Positions 21,060 through 63,165 of a stretch of DNA of 64,000 nucleotides are shown here, piece by piece. The stretch is taken from positions 164,287 to 228,286 of the IMG/VR virus record IMGVR_UViG_3300032242_002041, one strand, 5' to 3'. The notes under the pieces were generated by a model. That model worked only from the letters and a program-made list of their open reading frames with translations. It had not been told where the DNA came from and ran no database searches. The position numbers and the translations under genes are program-made. How positions within the stretch are numbered: the first letter of the stretch is position 1; each line of letters begins with the position of its first letter.

Positions 21060-23717
21060 TTACCACTCAAATAAAGTTTGGAAGGTATTTTCGGTGTTAG
21101 TAGCTGCCGCTAGATCCCATTCCAACACACCTAACAAATTGTCTAATTTTTGATCTACCACTGTGGCTTCCATTTCGCTGTCATCAAATGGTAGTTCTTT
21201 AAACCACGTAGGAAGATGTGTTTCATCAGTAGGATAACCTATTGACGTCCAGCCCAGTGGGTTTGCTTTAAGTTTGCAAACAATAGTTTTCATGCCATCT
21301 ACAATTTGCATACTATACTTGTCACTGTTCATACGACGCAAATTGTTCCAGTTAAGTGCGGCACGGACATGTCCTGGCATGTTGGCTTTGCCTAGGCGTT
21401 CTTCTTCCTTGCCATATTTGGTCAAGTTGTTTACACGCTTAGGACTACCCTTTTCCCAACCTGGACGTTCTTTGAACTTGTACTTGAACTCGCGAATCTT
21501 TTCAATGATTTCTTCACGACTTGTGCCAATTAGTACCTCATCAAGAATTTGACTTAGGAATTCTTGAATAACCTTAGGAGTATCACTACGCTTGAGATCT
21601 AATCCCATGGCTTTTACTTTACCCGGTGATCCGTGTGTGTCTACACGCTTGTTTTCTTTGTCGTAGTACATGACAGCATACCGCTTTTTAGTAATAAACA
21701 AGCCTTTACTGGCAACAATCTCACGTCCACCTTTAATAACATCGCCCATCTCCCTAGGCACGTGAAATGCTTGTTCCATAAAACCTGGAAAGCTATCGTT
21801 AACTTGATCAGCAATACTGTTATACAGTCGAACGGCAATTTCACGACTCCAGGTCATGTTGCCTGCTTCTATTTCTTTTTGTAGTACAGGATACGCTGTA
21901 AAATAACACGAGTCTGTATCACCATATATAATTGCCTCGCCTACGTGATCATACACACCTGTGATACATTCGTTCACATACGCATCCATATGCCGGGCAA
22001 TTGCACGACCAGTAAGAGTTGTGGATTGACCAATACGCTTATCAAAGAAACGGCAACCAGGATTAAGAATAGCACCATAGAGACTGTTGAGGTTAATCTT
22101 TTTAACAAGTTGACGCTTGTCCCAGTATTCTTCATCTTCTGCATTTTTACACTCCTTTAATCGGGCCTGCATCTCTTTACGTTCAGCATACCAACGTTTT
22201 AACAATCCTGGAATAACAGCTTCCTTCTCATAGGTAAAGATAGTACCGTTAGCGGTAATCATCCAAGGATGATTGCTATCAAAAATTATCTTCCATATGT
22301 CAGCGGCACTGTGTACACTCTCCTCACCGTCTTTCCAGTCAATGGTAATTTCTGTACCTACTTCGGTATTCATGACTGCTTCGTATTCTAAACTTCCAAA
22401 CAGGCCTTCCCATGCCCCGGCAAATGAGCTACCTGCTCGCATCTTATCACCAATATAGCGTTCAGTCATTATAGGTCGGAGTTGTCCTACAATAGTTTCA
22501 GGTCCCATATTAAGTGCTCTAATAGCACTTGGATACAGTGAGTTAATATCTATACTACCTACATACTCGTGTATGCCTTTTTTTGGAAACGCAACATAGG
22601 CACCTGCGGCTTGTGTGTCTTCATCCGAATAGCGTTCCTTGCGATTAGGCACAACCATACCACGCTCGTGTGCTTCGTTAATAATTGCTTGTTCTGTTAC
22701 AGCTACAGCACCCATTGTAGTTTGTAGTAACACTGTGTTTTCGTGTGCTAGGGTATTGGCCAAATCCAAGAACTTTAATTTCTTATCCAGCTTGGCAAGA
22801 ATCATTGTGTCCTGACGGTTATATTCGATAAACTTTTTAAAGTTTTGATTGTACAATTGATCAAGTGTGCCTTCAAACACCGTCTTGGTTTCTTGTAACT
22901 CATATTCAGCAATAGCATCCAAACTATAACTATGGCGTTCTTCGTATGTGTACTTGCGATACAGTTGCATATAGTCCATATGCACACGACCAATTAAATC
23001 GTAGGTTTCGTTTTCTGCACCAAAGCGTTCGAACATACGTTTCTTAGGGTACTGGTTCCACAGGCAAAATCTGCGTGTATCATCCTTGCTGAGAATACGT
23101 GTAACACGATTTACTGTGTAGGGTATATCATAACCCTCTGAGTTCCAACCGGATAGTGCATCGGCGTCTTCGATAAGGTCCAAGAATGTTTTTAACATTT
23201 CATCTTCACGCTCAAAGACGACGCAGTTTTCAAACTCCTTGGCAATTTCGTTCGCAGTTGCACGACTCATATGCTTGGGCGGAACAACTAGCGTGACCAT
23301 TTGATCGAGCCATTGCAAGTAGACCGAGATTGCAGTGATAGCATTAAATGGATCTGTTGTTGGTGAGAAACCACGTTCGGGATCAAAGTCTACTTCAATG
23401 TCAAAGAATGCTACGTTTAACTTGGGACCATCTTGCCCTTTGTAGTTTTCTTCTAAGCACCGAAAGATTGGATTGATATCACTCTCATACAGTTGCTTGC
23501 CTGACTGTATGCGAATTTCTTTACGAAACTCTTTGTTGTTGCGTGTGCTGAATCTACTGACAGGTGTGCCGAATAGGCTTAGGAATTTACCACGAGGATC
23601 CTCGTAATAAAATACATAGTTGGCCGGATATTCTTGATAGGTTCTACGTCCATCCTTCCGTTCAACTACATGAATACGATCGTGTTCACGATCAAATAGT
23701 GCATCTACATAACTCAA
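21060..23717 (-). CDS. polB: family B DNA polymerase
   Basis: FFDIEV ExoI, WNSEGYD, DINSLYPS, KINLNSLYG, YGDTDS, KKRY; TTG start. Confidence 0.97.
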   Translation of the reverse strand: MSYVDALFDREHDRIHVVERKDGRRTYQEYPANYVFYYEDPRGKFLSLFGTPVSRFSTRNNKEFRKEIRIQSGKQLYESDINPIFRCLEENYKGQDGPKLNVAFFDIEVDFDPERGFSPTTDPFNAITAISVYLQWLDQMVTLVVPPKHMSRATANEIAKEFENCVVFEREDEMLKTFLDLIEDADALSGWNSEGYDIPYTVNRVTRILSKDDTRRFCLWNQYPKKRMFERFGAENETYDLIGRVHMDYMQLYRKYTYEERHSYSLDAIAEYELQETKTVFEGTLDQLYNQNFKKFIEYNRQDTMILAKLDKKLKFLDLANTLAHENTVLLQTTMGAVAVTEQAIINEAHERGMVVPNRKERYSDEDTQAAGAYVAFPKKGIHEYVGSIDINSLYPSAIRALNMGPETIVGQLRPIMTERYIGDKMRAGSSFAGAWEGLFGSLEYEAVMNTEVGTEITIDWKDGEESVHSAADIWKIIFDSNHPWMITANGTIFTYEKEAVIPGLLKRWYAERKEMQARLKECKNAEDEEYWDKRQLVKKINLNSLYGAILNPGCRFFDKRIGQSTTLTGRAIARHMDAYVNECITGVYDHVGEAIIYGDTDSCYFTAYPVLQKEIEAGNMTWSREIAVRLYNSIADQVNDSFPGFMEQAFHVPREMGDVIKGGREIVASKGLFITKKRYAVMYYDKENKRVDTHGSPGKVKAMGLDLKRSDTPKVIQEFLSQILDEVLIGTSREEIIEKIREFKYKFKERPGWEKGSPKRVNNLTKYGKEEERLGKANMPGHVRAALNWNNLRRMNSDKYSMQIVDGMKTIVCKLKANPLGWTSIGYPTDETHLPTWFKELPFDDSEMEATVVDQKLDNLLGVLEWDLAAATNTENTFQTLFEW

Positions 23718-25210: not shown

Positions 25211-26110
25211 TCAACCTAATATTATTAGATTAACAGACACAAAGTCTTCTCGCCACCTACAAAATATTCTATCTAGTTGGTCCTGGTCTCGATTAACAAT
25301 ATTACCCAATGGATAATCTCCCCAAAGGTCTTGATAAGTAACCGCATTTTGATCCATCCATTTGCGAAACAATGGACCTTGATAGATCTCTTGTCTATAA
25401 GTTCCGTTTACTAATTTGCAACCGCCCCAACTCATGTGATGACCGGTTGTGTCCCAATGGTTAGGATCATCATTGTCGATAAAACTTTGCATGGTTGTTT
25501 TGCCATGCACAGCTTGATCCAAAATTAAATCAGCGTGTTCCCAGCTGTGGTATTGACGATGAGGAGCTAGATCAACATAACCAATTTTAAATCCGTGTCT
25601 ATCTAACTTAGGCTGAAAATTAAACTCCAATCCAGCTGTGCTTAATTCTTTTTTTGGATACTCATGAATAGTGGATTCTAAAACATGCACTACCTGATTT
25701 AATTCGTTCAACCAGTAATACTCAGCAGATAGTTCTAAATTATCAGTTGTTATTCCTTGAATATAATCATCAAACCAACTAGGATTGTTAGTTATTATCC
25801 GTTGAGAATGCTCAGTAAACCATCTATGCCATACATTAAGATGGTGTTGTGTAATCTCTTCCGGTGTACTAACCGGTAACGGTATAGGTAAAGAAGTCTT
25901 GGACAATTCTTGTTGCACTAATTGTTGATGAACCCACTGTGATTGATTTGCAACTAATAAGTTTGTTGCTATTCCTTGCTTTATTACACTTCTAGACTGG
26001 GGAAGTTTTTTGCAATATTCACCCCAGGCGCAAACTCCCGGATTATCTATTAAATCAATTAATAAACTTTCGGTGCTAGATCTAAATTTGATATCAATTT
26101 TTAGTTGCAT
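25211..26110 (-). CDS. hypothetical protein
   Basis: 299-aa AT-rich ORF. Confidence 0.7.
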   Translation of the reverse strand: MQLKIDIKFRSSTESLLIDLIDNPGVCAWGEYCKKLPQSRSVIKQGIATNLLVANQSQWVHQQLVQQELSKTSLPIPLPVSTPEEITQHHLNVWHRWFTEHSQRIITNNPSWFDDYIQGITTDNLELSAEYYWLNELNQVVHVLESTIHEYPKKELSTAGLEFNFQPKLDRHGFKIGYVDLAPHRQYHSWEHADLILDQAVHGKTTMQSFIDNDDPNHWDTTGHHMSWGGCKLVNGTYRQEIYQGPLFRKWMDQNAVTYQDLWGDYPLGNIVNRDQDQLDRIFCRWREDFVSVNLIILG

Positions 26111-26114
26111 ATTA

Positions 26115-26229
26115 ACCTGTAGCTCACTTTAAGTTACCATTCCGGGGCACGACTCCCATAATAACTAACCCAGCAGCCGGGCACACCCAAAGTAACGGTA
26201 ACGTCCTAAGGTAGGTGTTTTATACAGGT
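26115..26229 (-). ncRNA. candidate structured non-coding RNA
   Basis: GC-rich intergenic segment closed by ACCUGUA/UACAGGU with internal stems ACACC/GGUGU, GCCCGG/CUGGGU, AGUUAUU/GGUAACU, GGG/CCC. Confidence 0.45.
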
Positions 26230-26300
26230 GCATAGGGATTACGTTTGTAATCGCTATTATCACCTTCTTGTTGTTCTGGATAAATTGGATAATCGTTCAT
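26220..26300 (-). CDS. 26-aa micro-ORF
   Basis: MNDYPIYPEQQEGDNSDYKRNPYAPV; starts 5 nt after the upstream stop. Confidence 0.5.
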   Translation of the reverse strand: MNDYPIYPEQQEGDNSDYKRNPYAPV

Positions 26301-26304
26301 ATGT

Positions 26305-26943
26305 CTACTTACCGTCGACATGGAGCTGGCTACCATTATTGAAGCTGGGGCTAAATGGACTTTGTGCTACACGCCCGCCTTTGGATTGTGACCATGCATA
26401 GCCGGCACGATGTCCTGAACAGTCTTTGGTGCAAGGGCTACCAAGGAAGCTGAGTTCGTTTAATTCATCTTTGAGCCAGGTATCAGCAAAGGCTTTGCAC
26501 AATGCTTGAATTTTTTTATTTCGAGTAATTTCTAAATGATATGTTTTATTACCGGCTTTGGTTTGTTGACTAGGATCTCTATAGCCAGCATAGACTTTAT
26601 GTACCGGTGTACTACTGATCAAATCTCGACAGCTAGAACCCGCACGTTCAGGCATGGGTTCGGTGCAAGGACTACAGGTAGTCAGGATGATACTGCCATT
26701 GGGTATGTCGCCAAAACGGTCATGATACGCATCAATAGCCGCTCGTTCAGCGTGAACATCACCTGATTCGATCCAGTAGTTCAGTGCTGCCACACAGTTG
26801 TTGTTACGATCCAGCACCGCGGCTGCACACATCATGTAAGCATCGGGATCTCGACGCTGTCCGTCAATTACCAACTCACAAAGACGTACCAGGATTTCAT
26901 CTAGTTGCTTTCTATCATGTATTTGAAAATCACTTATGCGCAT
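26305..26943 (-). CDS. zinc-dependent deaminase-like protein plus C-terminal Cys peptide
   Basis: HAE...SPC..C deaminase motifs; MRISDF leader; LNE boundary before PCTKDCSGHRAGY. Confidence 0.75.
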   Translation of the reverse strand: MRISDFQIHDRKQLDEILVRLCELVIDGQRRDPDAYMMCAAAVLDRNNNCVAALNYWIESGDVHAERAAIDAYHDRFGDIPNGSIILTTCSPCTEPMPERAGSSCRDLISSTPVHKVYAGYRDPSQQTKAGNKTYHLEITRNKKIQALCKAFADTWLKDELNELSFLGSPCTKDCSGHRAGYAWSQSKGGRVAQSPFSPSFNNGSQLHVDGK

Positions 26944-51993: not shown

Positions 51994-52970
51994 TAATTGG
52001 TTCCTTCTGCGCTGATGTACTTTTGCATAGGCAAGAAGGTGGCACGTAGATCTTCTATCTGCTGATTTAATCCCTTGGGAGTAAGTTCACGCTCTTCAAC
52101 AAAGACCAAATTTTGGTCGCACCACTCTCGATATTCTTTAGTTTTCATTGCGGCGCTAAATGTTCGTTGATACCAAGCAACAATGTCTTTAGGAGTTTTA
52201 GGCGGAAGTGCTATTGCCCATCCGGCATAAACATTAATACCTGGAGCAATTGTGCTTAAGAATGGAACATTGGGATATTGTGCTAACTTACGATCGCCGG
52301 TGAATCCAATGATTTTTACTTTACCAGCATCAGCTAAAGGATGAGCTACAGCAATAGGCATTATTCCAAATTCTGTGCCACCGGCATCCAGACTGGCCAC
52401 ACTGGTAACTGCTTGCAATGGACCTTGGAACTTGATAAACTTGACCTGATCACGCTTGCCATTGCCTTTGACCATCAAGTATTCATAAGCCATGCGATGT
52501 GCGCCCCCGCCAATGGCCACGTTAATAGGTCGATCTGTGGTAGAAATTAATCGCACAAAATCTATAGGAGTGTTTACCCGGCTGTTGGGCCAGGCTACCA
52601 ATACCAACGGACTCTTGCCCATGGTCAATACGTATTCAAATGAATTGTAATCAAATTTTTTAACTTTCTTTTCCCAAATATCATTAGTAACAAACGTACT
52701 CATATGGCTAGGAATACCTGCGGTGTAACCGTCGGGAGCAGCATCGTACACATAATTCATGCCTACCACTGAGTCAGCACCGGGTTTATTTTCAATAACA
52801 AATTTAACCTTGCTCATTTTCTTTTCTGAAATGATGCTGGCTAACTTACGAAAAGCAATTTCATTTCCTGCTCCAGGAGCATTACCTATAACAACAATTA
52901 CAGGTTTTGTGGGTTCCCAGGCAAATGCCAGTGTGGGTATTAATAATAGTATTGCTAACAAACGTTTCAT
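51993..52970 (-). CDS. tripartite tricarboxylate transporter substrate-binding protein (Bug/TctC)
   Basis: Signal peptide, APGAG, IENKPGA, APDGYT, PPKTPKDIV. Confidence 0.85.
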   Translation of the reverse strand: MKRLLAILLLIPTLAFAWEPTKPVIVVIGNAPGAGNEIAFRKLASIISEKKMSKVKFVIENKPGADSVVGMNYVYDAAPDGYTAGIPSHMSTFVTNDIWEKKVKKFDYNSFEYVLTMGKSPLVLVAWPNSRVNTPIDFVRLISTTDRPINVAIGGGAHRMAYEYLMVKGNGKRDQVKFIKFQGPLQAVTSVASLDAGGTEFGIMPIAVAHPLADAGKVKIIGFTGDRKLAQYPNVPFLSTIAPGINVYAGWAIALPPKTPKDIVAWYQRTFSAAMKTKEYREWCDQNLVFVEERELTPKGLNQQIEDLRATFLPMQKYISAEGTN

Positions 52971-62274: not shown

Positions 62275-63165
62275 TTAGCCAAATACAGCACCGTTGTTGC
62301 CGACACAGTACCATTTACTATTTGCATATCGTAAACTGCATCCCTGACCAATGGTACTAAATGTGATAGTGCCTGATCCAGATGATTTCCATCCAGCATT
62401 GGCCACAGTAATAACCATATTGCCGGCAGAGGCAGTCATAATAAACTCTTTAACTTGACCGATTACACCGGCAGCCAAAGTAGCTGTCCATGCACCGGTT
62501 GTGGCAAATTTGGTACTGGTTACAGCTAAACTACAAGCCTGACCAGTAGCACTAAGAGTTTCACCTGTAGCGTTAAACGGAGCAAGTTCTTTATTATTTT
62601 CAAAAACAGTAATAGTAGTTCCGGCATTGCTGGTTACAAATTGAAAACTGTATACCCCAACTGCGGCAAAAGTTATTACATTGGTCAATACGTTTAATCC
62701 TTGAATTCCAGCAGCATTAACTGAAACAGCTGAAGGAAGTGTTAACGTATGTGCAACACTAGTTACTGTAGCTACTACGGTAACAGAGGCTGCAGCTCCT
62801 GCGGCAGGAAAATTGCTAAACGCTAAACTAACGGCACCATTGGTGCTCAAGGTCTGATAACTGCCCAAAGCATAGTTGATAGTAACAGAACTGGCCACTG
62901 GTCCTAAGGCCACGGTGGTCTGGTACATGTTTTTTAAATAACCATTACTTAAGGTACTGGTTTGTAGGTTATTGACCACTGGCTGACTGTTGGCCAAACT
63001 AGCGGTTAACACTGCGGTATTTTGTAAAGCAGTTATTTCGTCGGCTGCAAATTGGAAATTAGTAGACGTATTGGTAAAATTTGTACGAAATCCTTGCGAA
63101 TTATTGTCTTGTCCGGCAACTGGATAAGCGCCGTCGATGTTGTTTGGGTTAATGTTACTTGTCAT
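62275..63165 (-). CDS. putative tail/structural protein
   Basis: YPVAGQDNNSQGFRTNF N-terminus, Ser/Thr/Ala beta-rich body; TATAAATA at 63189-63196. Confidence 0.65.
   Translation of the reverse strand: MTSNINPNNIDGAYPVAGQDNNSQGFRTNFTNTSTNFQFAADEITALQNTAVLTASLANSQPVVNNLQTSTLSNGYLKNMYQTTVALGPVASSVTINYALGSYQTLSTNGAVSLAFSNFPAAGAAASVTVVATVTSVAHTLTLPSAVSVNAAGIQGLNVLTNVITFAAVGVYSFQFVTSNAGTTITVFENNKELAPFNATGETLSATGQACSLAVTSTKFATTGAWTATLAAGVIGQVKEFIMTASAGNMVITVANAGWKSSGSGTITFSTIGQGCSLRYANSKWYCVGNNGAVFG

What the first reader, a model, noticed from the sequence alone, without database searches (positions are those of the whole stretch)
26115..26229. Candidate novel structured RNA at the end of the virion-cargo operon
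Seen: an about 115-nt GC-richer non-coding island in an otherwise packed AT-rich genome. It is closed by a 7-bp helix and has at least four internal stems plus alternative pairings (GUUACC/GGUAAC, ACUUUG/UAAAGU) that could form pseudoknots. It is not a tRNA or a simple terminator. Inference: sRNA, ribozyme or processing element.
Basis: partly seen in the sequence, partly recalled or inferred. Interest (0 to 1): 0.65.

Follow-up and report, generated by a model that had tools for sequence, protein, structure and literature searches.

The report
Phage RNA complementary to 23S rRNA
The non-coding island is a real, single-copy, pseudoknotted RNA element shared by at least 190 uncultivated giant-phage contigs and absent from Rfam, and its conserved single-stranded loops are the exact antisense of a universally conserved stretch of bacterial 23S ribosomal RNA, which suggests a phage RNA that grips the host's large ribosomal subunit RNA.

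Summary
On its own the window sequence folds no better than shuffles (z -0.58), and the 7-bp closing helix is not conserved. A covariance model built from relatives matches window 26114-26221 (minus strand) at 43.6 bits, E 2e-11. The family has at least 190 distinct members in IMG/VR phage contigs. It occurs about once per 300-350 kb genome, on the gene strand, usually directly after a stop codon. Rfam 15 has no match, nor do cultured phages. Covariation supports helices P1, P2 and P3 and a pseudoknot between the P2 loop and the 3' tail (score 0.56 versus 0.17 in shuffles).

The unpaired blocks are reverse complements of E. coli 23S rRNA domain IV:
- The J1 block CUACCUUAGGACCG matches nt 1920-1933.
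- The three P3 loop classes match 1929-1937, 1964-1969 and 1968-1976.
- The window (class B) is antisense to 1910-1933 at 21 of 24 positions.

My best reading is a structured antisense RNA aimed at helices H69/H70 of host 23S rRNA. The complementarity is shown. Binding, expression and effect are inferred. Interest is high.

The parts
26122..26218 (-). Whole conserved RNA element (97 nt), a class B member of the family
   Evidence: Covariance model R1 matches 26114-26221 (minus strand) at 43.6 bits, E 2.4e-11. It is the only significant match in the 228 kb phage record.
26214..26218 (-). P1, 5' strand (ACACC)
   Evidence: Pairs with GGUGU at 26183-26187. In the family, P1 covaries (ACUC/GAGU, CACAC/GUGUG, ACCUG/CGGGU, AUUCAC/GUGAAU). 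The mean helix is 4.55 against 3.82 +/- 0.075 for shuffled partners.
26192..26214 (-). J1 plus extension (CUACCUUAGGAC GUUACCGUUAC): a single-stranded block antisense to 23S rRNA H69 and its 3' junction
   Evidence: 21 of 24 aligned positions are identical to the reverse complement of E. coli 23S nt 1910-1933. There is an exact 12-nt match to 1922-1933. CCUUAGGAC is present in most members recovered when J1 was left free.
26183..26187 (-). P1, 3' strand (GGUGU)
26168..26182 (-). P2 hairpin: 4-bp stem GCCC/GGGU with the 7-nt loop GGCUGCU (26172-26178)
   Evidence: P2 is 99.3% paired across 100 sequences, and one pair is split GC:50 / CG:50. It is 100% paired in class B.
26132..26166 (-). P3 hairpin. 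Outer stem 26159-26166 with 26132-26139. Inner stem 26155-26158 with 26143-26146. 3' bulge GAA at 26140-26142. Loop AGUCGUGC at 26147-26154 (class B).
   Evidence: In class B, 7 of the 8 outer pairs show changes on both sides, and the block GGAGUCGUGCCC is invariant in 25 sequences. The loop's UCGUGC is the reverse complement of 23S 1964-1969.
26122..26128 (-). 3' tail AGUGAGC: the 3' strand of the pseudoknot with the P2 loop
   Evidence: The three core pairs are 100% paired in 100 sequences, with 9 compensatory C-G to G-C changes. The 6-bp version with one bulged G is 100% paired in class B. Loop variants GGCUACU go with tails GUAGC or GUGGC.
26220..26300 (-). 26-aa micro-ORF (MNDYPIYPE...NPYAPV), ending 1 nt before the element. 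Flanking, not part of the RNA.
   Evidence: Homologous micro-ORFs (YPVYPE...NPYSPV stop) end 8-14 nt before CCUUAGGAC in 10 of 169 members, and further upstream in 1 more.
26111..26121 (-). 11-nt spacer to the ATG of the 299-aa ORF.
   Evidence: Read from the sequence. The helix is not conserved.
25211..26110 (-). Downstream 299-aa ORF of unknown function. Flanking gene, used to fetch relatives.
   Evidence: No Pfam or PHROG match. 56 homologues found.

Best explanation
Window 26122-26218 (minus strand) encodes a member of a previously undescribed family of roughly 85-105-nt structured RNAs. The family is carried about once per genome by a clade of uncultivated T4-like jumbo phages.

The fold is a scaffold:
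- P1 closes a large loop.
- P2 is a hairpin whose 7-nt loop pairs with the 3' tail, giving an H-type pseudoknot.
- P3 is a long hairpin.

This scaffold displays two single-stranded blocks, J1 in the P1 loop and the P3 apical loop. Both are antisense to neighbouring, universally conserved segments of bacterial 23S rRNA domain IV: the 3' strand and loop of helix 69, the junction, and either strand of helix 70.

I propose that the RNA is co-transcribed with the upstream gene. I propose that it base-pairs with host 23S rRNA, either nascent rRNA or the exposed H69 of free 50S subunits, and so interferes with or redirects 50S maturation or subunit joining.

Shown: family membership, structure with covariation, genomic placement, and the complementarity.
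Inferred: that the RNA is made, that it binds 23S rRNA, and what follows from binding.
For: Family and membership
- Model R1 scores the window at 43.6 bits, E 2e-11.
- It occurs about once per genome in five large records, one of them complete at 352 kb.
- The scan pattern occurs in only one of 185,579 prokaryote species genomes (one MAG, two contigs).

Structure
- Across 100 sequences, 88.7% of cells are paired and the covariation score is 0.561. Shuffles give 0.173 +/- 0.009 (0 of 500 reach the observed value), and slid controls give at most 0.084.
- For the window's own class the score is 0.277 against 0.102.
- G-U pairs occur on this strand, so the fold belongs to the sense-strand RNA.

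Target
- On E. coli rrlH, CUACCUUAGGACCG is the reverse complement of 23S 1920-1933.
- P3 loop class A, UUCGCUACC, is the reverse complement of 1929-1937.
- Class C, ACGCCAUUC, is the reverse complement of 1968-1976, which I read as the opposite strand of H70.
- Class B, UCGUGC, is the reverse complement of 1964-1969.
- In 53 of 57 members sampled, the longest exact complement to E. coli rRNAs is 10-15 nt and starts at 23S 1916-1922. Overall, 40 of the 57 reach 12 nt or more. Only 1 of 171 shuffles reaches 12 nt.
- The 18-mer target is exact in 28 of 61 genomes of another phylum, with 0 control hits.
- Two of the three J1 variant types are A-to-G changes opposite U1923 or U1926, which are wobble-compatible. 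The third shifts the pairing to 1918-1927.
- Members with an extra CUA before CCUUAGG extend the match to 1931-1933.
- A truncated second copy keeps a 10-nt match to 1927-1936.
Against: - There is no expression data. No RNA run holds this sequence.
- No binding data exist.
- In mature ribosomes most of 1920-1937 is base-paired or buried (textbook knowledge), so access would need nascent rRNA, free 50S, or strand invasion.
- J1 and the class A loop compete for G1929/G1930, and a 9-nt hairpin loop cannot pair along its whole length.
- The class B loop, the window's class, matches only 6 nt. I estimate the chance of that within +/- 60 nt at about 0.03.
- The complementarity could be a relic of an rDNA fragment captured in antisense orientation, now conserved for another reason.
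- One J1 variant has a mismatch opposite A1928.
- The first scan fixed the J1 and class A loop motifs, so their apparent invariance is partly by construction. The later scans relax one block at a time only.
Confidence: 0.55

Rival explanations
1. It is a cis-acting 3'-end element of the upstream transcript. It could be a stabiliser against 3' exonucleases, a processing site or a protein-binding site. On this view the conserved loops bind a protein, and the rRNA complementarity is only an evolutionary relic of a captured antisense rDNA fragment.
For: - The element sits directly after a same-strand upstream ORF: 114 of 119 are on the same strand, and the stop codon is mostly within -1 to +5 nt of P1.
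- Downstream genes usually have their own promoters. 26 of 126 have a sigma-70 promoter scoring at least 11 of 12 that starts exactly 9 nt after the tail, against 1 of 120 controls.
- L120 has a terminator right after the element.
- Class B looks like a nearly continuous antisense copy of H69, which fits origin by capture.
Against: - It is single-copy per genome, which is odd for a generic stabiliser.
- A relic would not explain three different P3 loop classes each matching a different nearby 23S segment.
- A relic would not explain wobble-compatible J1 variants.
- A relic would not explain why exactly the unpaired blocks stay invariant while the stems covary.
Confidence: 0.2
2. It is an RNA guide for the host rrl genes (DNA) rather than the rRNA. 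It might direct a phage nuclease, recombinase or R-loop formation to the multi-copy 23S rDNA. This same LSU site is a known hotspot for homing endonucleases (I-CeuI), group I introns and R2 retrotransposons (my own knowledge).
For: - The same complementarity data apply.
- The two loops pair with adjacent target segments in the same 5'-to-3' order, as EBS2/EBS1 of group II introns do (inference).
Against: - No conserved neighbouring protein gene: there are 51 upstream and 47 downstream gene clusters.
- All loop classes are complementary to the rRNA-sense strand only.
- No intron or ribozyme core is detected by Rfam.
- At 97 nt it is far smaller than known DNA-targeting ribozymes or guide RNAs with two recognition loops.
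Confidence: 0.08
3. It is a new class of self-cleaving ribozyme that processes the polycistronic transcript between two transcription units. This is one of the first reader's suggestions.
For: - It is compact and pseudoknotted, with many invariant unpaired nucleotides.
- It is intergenic and on the gene strand in phages, as many small ribozymes are (my own knowledge).
Against: - No match to any ribozyme family in Rfam 15, even at E up to 1-10.
- The invariant nucleotides are explained by rRNA complementarity.
- P3 loop sequences come in several unrelated classes, which is unlike a catalytic core.
Confidence: 0.07
4. It is a riboswitch or 5' leader regulating the downstream gene. In the window that would be the 299-aa ORF, which starts 11 nt after the element.
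For: - In the window and some relatives the element abuts the start of the next gene.
Against: - Downstream genes fall into 47 unrelated clusters.
- A strong promoter lies between the element and the gene in at least 26 members.
- The closing helix is not conserved.
Confidence: 0.03
5. It is only an intrinsic terminator plus chance structure. The P2 hairpin followed by U/A-rich sequence was flagged by the terminator scan.
For: One search lists 26182-26168 (minus strand) as terminator-like. The MFE is no better than shuffles.
Against: - In the family, P2 is followed by the P3 stem and not by a conserved U tract.
- The P2 loop is invariant and pairs with the tail.
- About 100 nt are conserved in phages whose neighbouring proteins share only about 28% identity.
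Confidence: 0.02

Closest known systems
Loop-presented antisense RNAs of phages and plasmids (for example lambda OOP, CopA, RNA I) and trans-acting base-pairing sRNAs
   Same: A structured scaffold exposes short single-stranded seeds in loops that are complementary to another RNA. The class A loop AUUCGCUAC contains a UUCG stretch that fits the YUNR U-turn pattern seen in antisense recognition loops (my own knowledge).
   Different: - The apparent target is ribosomal RNA, not an mRNA or a replication primer.
- Recognition is bipartite, from two separate loops.
- The scaffold is a pseudoknot.
- There is no cis-encoded sense partner in the phage.
Archaeal and eukaryotic rRNA guide RNAs (C/D and H/ACA sno/sRNAs)
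   Same: Small RNAs with 10-14-nt complementarity to universally conserved rRNA segments, including domain IV of LSU rRNA.
   Different: - No box C (RUGAUGA) in 0 of 169 members, and no consistent box D or ACA.
- Bacteria and their phages are not known to use such RNPs.
- The architecture differs.
Group II intron EBS1/EBS2-IBS recognition, and mobile elements that target this LSU site (I-CeuI site, L1917-L1951 group I introns, R2 elements)
   Same: Two separate loops pair with adjacent target segments in the same 5'-to-3' order. The target GGUCCUAAGGUAGCGAA is the classic I-CeuI/R2 region of LSU rDNA (my own knowledge; the E. coli sequence was verified).
   Different: - No intron catalytic core or ORF.
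- It is 97 nt long.
- It is not inserted in rDNA.
- No Rfam intron match.
Viral RNA elements with rRNA complementarity next to stop codons or in 3' regions (calicivirus TURBS, plant-virus 3' translation enhancers)
   Same: A structured element just downstream of a stop codon, carrying a loop complementary to rRNA.
   Different: - Those are eukaryotic.
- They pair with 18S rRNA over 5-7 nt and act in cis on reinitiation or initiation.
- Here the match is 10-15 nt (9-15 nt per block) to 23S rRNA, and downstream genes often have their own promoters.
Unnamed candidate structured RNAs from the IMG/VR screen (PMC10690425; 8,495 csRNAs)
   Same: Same data source (IMG/VR intergenic regions) and the same kind of evidence (covariation). 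The family may be among those candidates.
   Different: I could not check, because the supplementary alignments are not held. The paper's text does not mention 23S (0 occurrences).

Membership tests
Any Rfam 15 family (4227 models, including riboswitches, ribozymes, introns, sRNAs) | Covariance-model match at or near the gathering score | tested here: not met
   No match in the window at gathering score. The best E-values are 7.7 and 9.5, to unrelated families, in 26000-26350. No relevant match in five loci that carry canonical copies.
tRNA / tmRNA | Cloverleaf or tRNA-like domain detectable by ARAGORN | tested here: not met
   0 genes in the whole window.
Intrinsic (Rho-independent) terminator | GC-rich hairpin immediately followed by a conserved U tract | tested here: not met
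   P2 was flagged in the window. In the family it is followed by P3 and its loop pairs with the tail. U runs follow the tail only in a minority.
Riboswitch / cis-regulatory 5' leader | Sits in the 5' UTR of functionally related genes, with no promoter between element and gene | tested here: not met
   47 downstream gene clusters. A near-consensus sigma-70 promoter lies 9 nt after the element in 26 of 126 members.
H-type pseudoknotted RNA | Hairpin-loop nucleotides pair with a downstream single strand, supported by compensatory changes | tested here: met
   P2 loop G-C-U pairs with tail A-G-C: 100% paired, with 9 double changes. The 6-bp version is 100% paired in class B.
Base-pairing (antisense) regulatory RNA | Conserved single-stranded seed complementary to a defined target, beyond chance | tested here: met
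   Exact complements of 9-15 nt to 23S 1916-1937 and 1968-1976. Shuffles reach 12 nt in 1 of 171.
Base-pairing (antisense) regulatory RNA | The RNA is expressed and binds or regulates its target | not testable with these tools
   No RNA sequencing run holds the sequence.
C/D-box or H/ACA rRNA guide RNA | Box C RUGAUGA and box D CUGA, or an ACA box 3 nt from the 3' end with a pseudouridylation pocket | tested here: not met
   RUGAUGA in 0 of 169. CUGA near the 3' end in 18 of 169. ACA after the tail in 24 of 169.
Self-cleaving ribozyme | Site-specific self-scission | not testable with these tools
   Only the absence of matches to known classes could be shown.
The new family itself (model R1) | Match to the covariance model, with P1, J1, P2, the pseudoknot tail and P3 in order | tested here: met
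   Window 26114-26221 (minus strand): 43.6 bits, full-length model alignment. It is the lowest score among full members (61-94 bits) because its P3 loop is class B, while the model was built from class A.

The most novel reading that the evidence does not exclude
A clade of giant phages encodes a dedicated, structured antisense RNA that binds helix 69 / helix 70 of the host's 23S rRNA. By doing so it would control 50S maturation or subunit joining. To my knowledge this would be the first natural virus-encoded RNA that targets bacterial ribosomal RNA by base pairing. Because the target is universally conserved, it would amount to a broad-spectrum, programmable-looking ribosome ligand.
Probability: 0.4. 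Interest if true: 0.95.

Novelty: categorically new. Interest (0 to 1): 0.86.

Why it matters
If the RNA pairs with 23S rRNA, it adds a new way for phages to take over or tune host translation. Known routes include phage-encoded tRNAs, ribosomal proteins and protein-modifying enzymes.

It would also identify H69/H70, the B2a bridge region, as a naturally exploited weak point that nucleic acids can reach.

It offers a compact natural scaffold that presents two guide loops, and the natural loop classes already show that the second loop can be swapped to reach a different rRNA strand.

The idea is directly testable in E. coli, because the target sequence there is identical for classes A and C.

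Even if the rRNA idea fails, this is a large, well-supported, single-copy RNA family of giant phages with no known function and no Rfam entry.

Tried and rejected
- Single-sequence folding gave no signal on either strand (z -0.58 and +0.10).
- Rfam found nothing at gathering or permissive thresholds, on the window or on canonical copies.
- ARAGORN found nothing.
- blastn and tblastn of the region and both flanking proteins against 50,697 cultured phage records gave no match.
- Model R1 found no copy in the nearest cultured relatives by DNA polymerase: Phosso, Atu_ph07 and Vibrio phage 2.275.O.
- The search for related loci with the single 299-aa protein found nothing. The profile version worked.
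- RNA sequencing runs: none hold the sequence, so I did not use read laying.
- RNAduplex against the whole 23S first timed out, then gave an unrealistic long-range duplex. I replaced it with exact-complement counting against shuffles.
- Target inside the phage genome: no site has both complements.
- The Haliscomenobacter MAG that carries two copies has no assembled 23S target, so it gives no host inference.
- Supplementary alignments of PMC10690425 are not held. Sequence-motif and phrase searches of the literature gave nothing relevant.
- I considered the complementarity of the P2 loop CGGCUGCUG to 16S 519-527, and of the P2 loop and tail 7-mers to 23S 1070-1076 and 1099-1105. I do not adopt these, because the compensatory variants GGGUGCU/GUGACC show that these blocks pair with each other.

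Full report
**Setting.** The window is part of a 228 kb IMG/VR phage record, estimated to be 66% complete. Nearly all long ORFs lie on the minus strand. The family B DNA polymerase at 21060-23717 is about 50% identical to those of Sinorhizobium phage Phosso and 46% to Agrobacterium phage Atu_ph07, with a long tail of T4-like phages below that. So this is a T4-like jumbo phage.

The finding lies on the gene strand. Upstream is a deaminase-domain ORF (26305-26943), followed by a 26-aa micro-ORF (26300-26220). Downstream is a 299-aa ORF of unknown function (26110-25211). Further downstream come a DsbA-like ORF, a radical SAM/SPASM ORF and the polymerase.

**The observation itself.** The non-coding stretch is real, about 109 nt. 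Its GC content is only moderately raised: 48.7% against a window mean of 41.7%, in the top 12% of 115-nt windows.
- As a single sequence it folds no better than dinucleotide shuffles: z -0.58 on the transcribed strand and +0.10 on the other.
- ARAGORN finds no tRNA.
- Rfam 15 finds nothing, even at E up to 10.

**Homologues.** The 299-aa protein has 56 relatives in the large protein collection. Fetching their contigs and scanning with nhmmer showed that the non-coding sequence is conserved in loci where the protein is only 28-66% identical. It also sits next to different genes.

In 185,579 prokaryote species genomes it hit only two contigs of a single MAG. I counted 169 distinct sequences with a strict definition, plus about 20 J1 variants.
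- Canonical copies have no Rfam match either.
- Cultured phages have no copy by blastn.
- The three nearest cultured relatives have no copy by covariance model.

**Membership of the window copy.** Covariance model R1 was built from 123 class A sequences. It matches window 26114-26221 (minus strand) over its full length at 43.6 bits, E 2.4e-11. Nothing else in the 228 kb record matches significantly.

Five large phage records have one strong copy each. One complete 352 kb genome also has a truncated second copy. The element is therefore a single-copy locus, not a dispersed repeat.

**Structure.** The family architecture has these parts:
- P1, which closes a loop holding the invariant J1 block, often with an extra hairpin P1a.
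- P2, a 4-bp stem with the invariant loop GGCUGCU.
- P3, a long hairpin with an inner and an outer stem and a 3' bulge.
- A 3' tail, AAAGUGAGC.

On a model-fitted alignment of 100 sequences:
- 88.7% of cells are paired.
- The covariation score is 0.561, against 0.173 +/- 0.009 in shuffles (0 of 500 as high) and at most 0.084 when partners are slid.
- P2 is 99.3% paired, and one pair is split GC:50 / CG:50.
- The P2 loop-tail pseudoknot is 100% paired, with nine compensatory changes.
- This alignment leans towards the model, but RNAalifold found the P2 and P3 pairs on an independent MAFFT alignment.

Further points on the structure:
- The strands of P1 sit at variable distances, so I tested P1 separately. 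The mean helix is 4.55 against 3.82 +/- 0.075 for shuffled partners, with many helix types.
- Loop variants GGCUACU go with tails GUAGC or GUGGC. Together with the majority pairing, this indicates a 6-bp pseudoknot with one bulged G.
- G-U pairs are common on this strand, so the fold belongs to the sense RNA.

**The window is class B.** When the P3 loop was left free, about a third of the listed hits (29 of the 80 rows shown) were new loci. Of the 44 new distinct sequences, 24 carried the invariant block GGAGUCGUGCCC instead of the class A loop AUUCGCUAC. The window has that block too, which makes 25 class B sequences, and L194 has a P3 identical to the window's.

For these 25 sequences, the structure read from the window is 96% paired. 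Covariation is 0.277 against 0.102 +/- 0.011. Seven of the eight outer P3 pairs change on both sides. The window copy is therefore a normal member of a second subtype and not a decayed copy. The window coordinates of every helix are given in the parts list.

**Genomic placement.**
- The nearest upstream ORF is on the same strand in 114 of 119 cases, and its stop codon mostly lies within -1 to +5 nt of P1.
- Neighbouring genes are very diverse: 51 upstream and 47 downstream clusters. The commonest downstream gene is a DsbA-like ORF (32 of 123).
- In 26 of 126 members a sigma-70 promoter scoring at least 11 of 12 starts exactly 9 nt after the tail, against 1 of 120 control windows. Others show a T4-late-like GATAAATAC motif.

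So the element ends a transcription unit rather than leading one. This argues against a riboswitch.

**The key finding.** The invariant unpaired blocks are antisense to 23S rRNA. I first recalled the sequence from memory, then verified it on E. coli K-12 rrlH.
- CUACCUUAGGACCG is the reverse complement of nt 1920-1933, covering the H69 3' strand and the junction.
- The class A loop UUCGCUACC is the reverse complement of 1929-1937.
- The class C loop ACGCCAUUC is the reverse complement of 1968-1976.
- The class B UCGUGC is the reverse complement of 1964-1969.
- Reading the E. coli sequence, 1933-1941 and 1968-1976 can pair with each other, and I take this to be H70. That is inference from the sequence and from memory of the 23S structure. 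On this reading classes A and C address opposite strands of one helix.
- The window's J1 and its extension (26214-26192) match the reverse complement of 1910-1933 at 21 of 24 aligned positions. Another class B member matches at 22 of 24. Class B is therefore antisense to almost all of H69.

Statistics and natural variation:
- In 53 of 57 sampled members, the longest exact complement to E. coli 23S, 16S or 5S is 10-15 nt and starts at 23S 1916-1922. Overall, 40 of the 57 reach 12 nt or more. Only 1 of 171 shuffles reaches 12 nt.
- The 18-nt target is exact in 28 of 61 genomes of another phylum, with no hits for the reversed control. Two of those 23S genes are identical to E. coli from about 1880 to 1973.
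- Two J1 variants are A-to-G changes opposite U1923 or U1926. Members with an extra CUA extend the match to 1931-1933. The CCCUAGGACCGUU type loses one pair but gains 1918-1919. The truncated paralogue keeps 10 nt, 1927-1936.
- The phage genome itself has no site with both complements.

**Mechanism proposed.**
- Shown: a conserved scaffold, with covariation, that leaves J1 and the P3 loop unpaired, and their complementarity to neighbouring 23S segments in the same 5'-to-3' order.
- Inferred: the RNA is co-transcribed with the upstream gene. It first contacts an accessible part of domain IV. From textbook knowledge, the H69 loop is exposed on free 50S, and all of domain IV is exposed on nascent rRNA. 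Pairing then extends into H69 and H70.
- Expected result: a block or change in formation of the B2a bridge region, hence in subunit joining or 50S maturation.
- Unknown: whether this serves host shut-off, ribosome specialisation or something else.

**Weak points.**
- There is no expression or binding evidence.
- The target is largely structured in mature ribosomes.
- J1 and the class A loop overlap by two target nucleotides.
- The class B loop match is short.
- Part of the apparent invariance comes from how I searched.

**Rivals.** They are given separately with their odds:
- a cis-acting 3'-end element whose complementarity is a relic (0.2);
- a guide for rDNA (0.08);
- a new self-cleaving ribozyme (0.07);
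- a riboswitch (0.03);
- a terminator plus chance (0.02).

**Novelty.** There is no Rfam family and no hit in the cultured-phage collection. Literature searches by motif and by phrase found nothing relevant. A large IMG/VR screen (PMC10690425) may list the family as an unnamed candidate. I could not check its alignments, and its text does not mention 23S. To my knowledge, a phage-encoded structured RNA antisense to 23S rRNA has not been described.

**Verdict.** The feature is real and belongs to a large, undescribed RNA family. The most likely function is pairing with host 23S rRNA H69/H70 (confidence 0.55). Interest is 0.86.

Noticed in passing
window 26220-26300 (-); also L034, L049, L073, L114, L118, L150, L170, L188, L202, L058: There is a conserved micro-ORF of about 24-27 aa (M..YPVYPE, then an acidic stretch, then NPYSPV and stop). 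It ends 8-14 nt before CCUUAGGAC in 10 of 169 members, and further upstream in 1 more. In L003 a homologue lies away from the RNA element. Its function is unknown.
   Followed up: partly
window 25211-26110 (-): The 299-aa protein family has 56 relatives and no Pfam or PHROG match. It has 36 invariant residues, including the block HGKTTMQSFIDNDDPxHWDTTGHH, which looks like a metal-binding enzyme motif. It is often next to radical SAM/SPASM and Asp/Arg-hydroxylase-like genes.
   Followed up: partly
L040, L060, L065, L110, L121, L126, L149 and 19 others: 9 nt after the element's tail: A near-consensus sigma-70 promoter (TTGACA, 16-17 nt spacer, TATAAT or TATACT) sits at a fixed 9-nt spacing after the RNA. 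It is followed by a UUUAGGAG ribosome-binding site and usually a DsbA-like 85-102-aa gene. Other members have a GATAAATAC motif resembling T4 late promoters.
   Followed up: partly
family P2 loop and tail; window 26171-26179 and 26122-26128: CGGCUGCUG is the exact reverse complement of E. coli 16S 519-527 (the 530 loop). GGCUGCU and AGUGAGC are reverse complements of 23S 1070-1076 and 1099-1105 (the GTPase-associated centre). I treat these as probably chance, because the two blocks covary with each other, but they remain unexplained.
   Followed up: partly
L163:1501-1578 (record G002, complete 352,754-bp genome with terminal repeats): A second, truncated copy lacks P1 and J1 but keeps P2, the tail and a P3 loop. 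That loop has a 10-nt complement to 23S 1927-1936. It scores 32 bits.
   Followed up: partly
L154:7850-7934 and L155:4105-4203: The only prokaryote-genome hits are two contigs of one Haliscomenobacter MAG. They could be mis-binned phage contigs or a hint at the host. The MAG has no assembled 23S target region.
   Followed up: partly
window 62900-62909 (CCUUAGGACC on the minus strand) and 52552-52634 (+): There are weak model matches (7.3 and 10.8 bits), one of which holds a second CCUUAGGACC. A 10-mer is expected about 0.4 times in this genome, so this is probably chance.
   Followed up: no
window 26305-26943 (-): A cytidine/deoxycytidylate deaminase domain ORF (PF00383, E 4e-8) carries a C-terminal extension of about 90 aa. 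It has no relative among cultured phages by tblastn.
   Followed up: no
L040:3813-3850 (-): A sub-threshold match to a CRISPR direct-repeat model (RF01369: 30.4 bits against a gathering score of 35, E 0.033) lies in a related phage contig.
   Followed up: no
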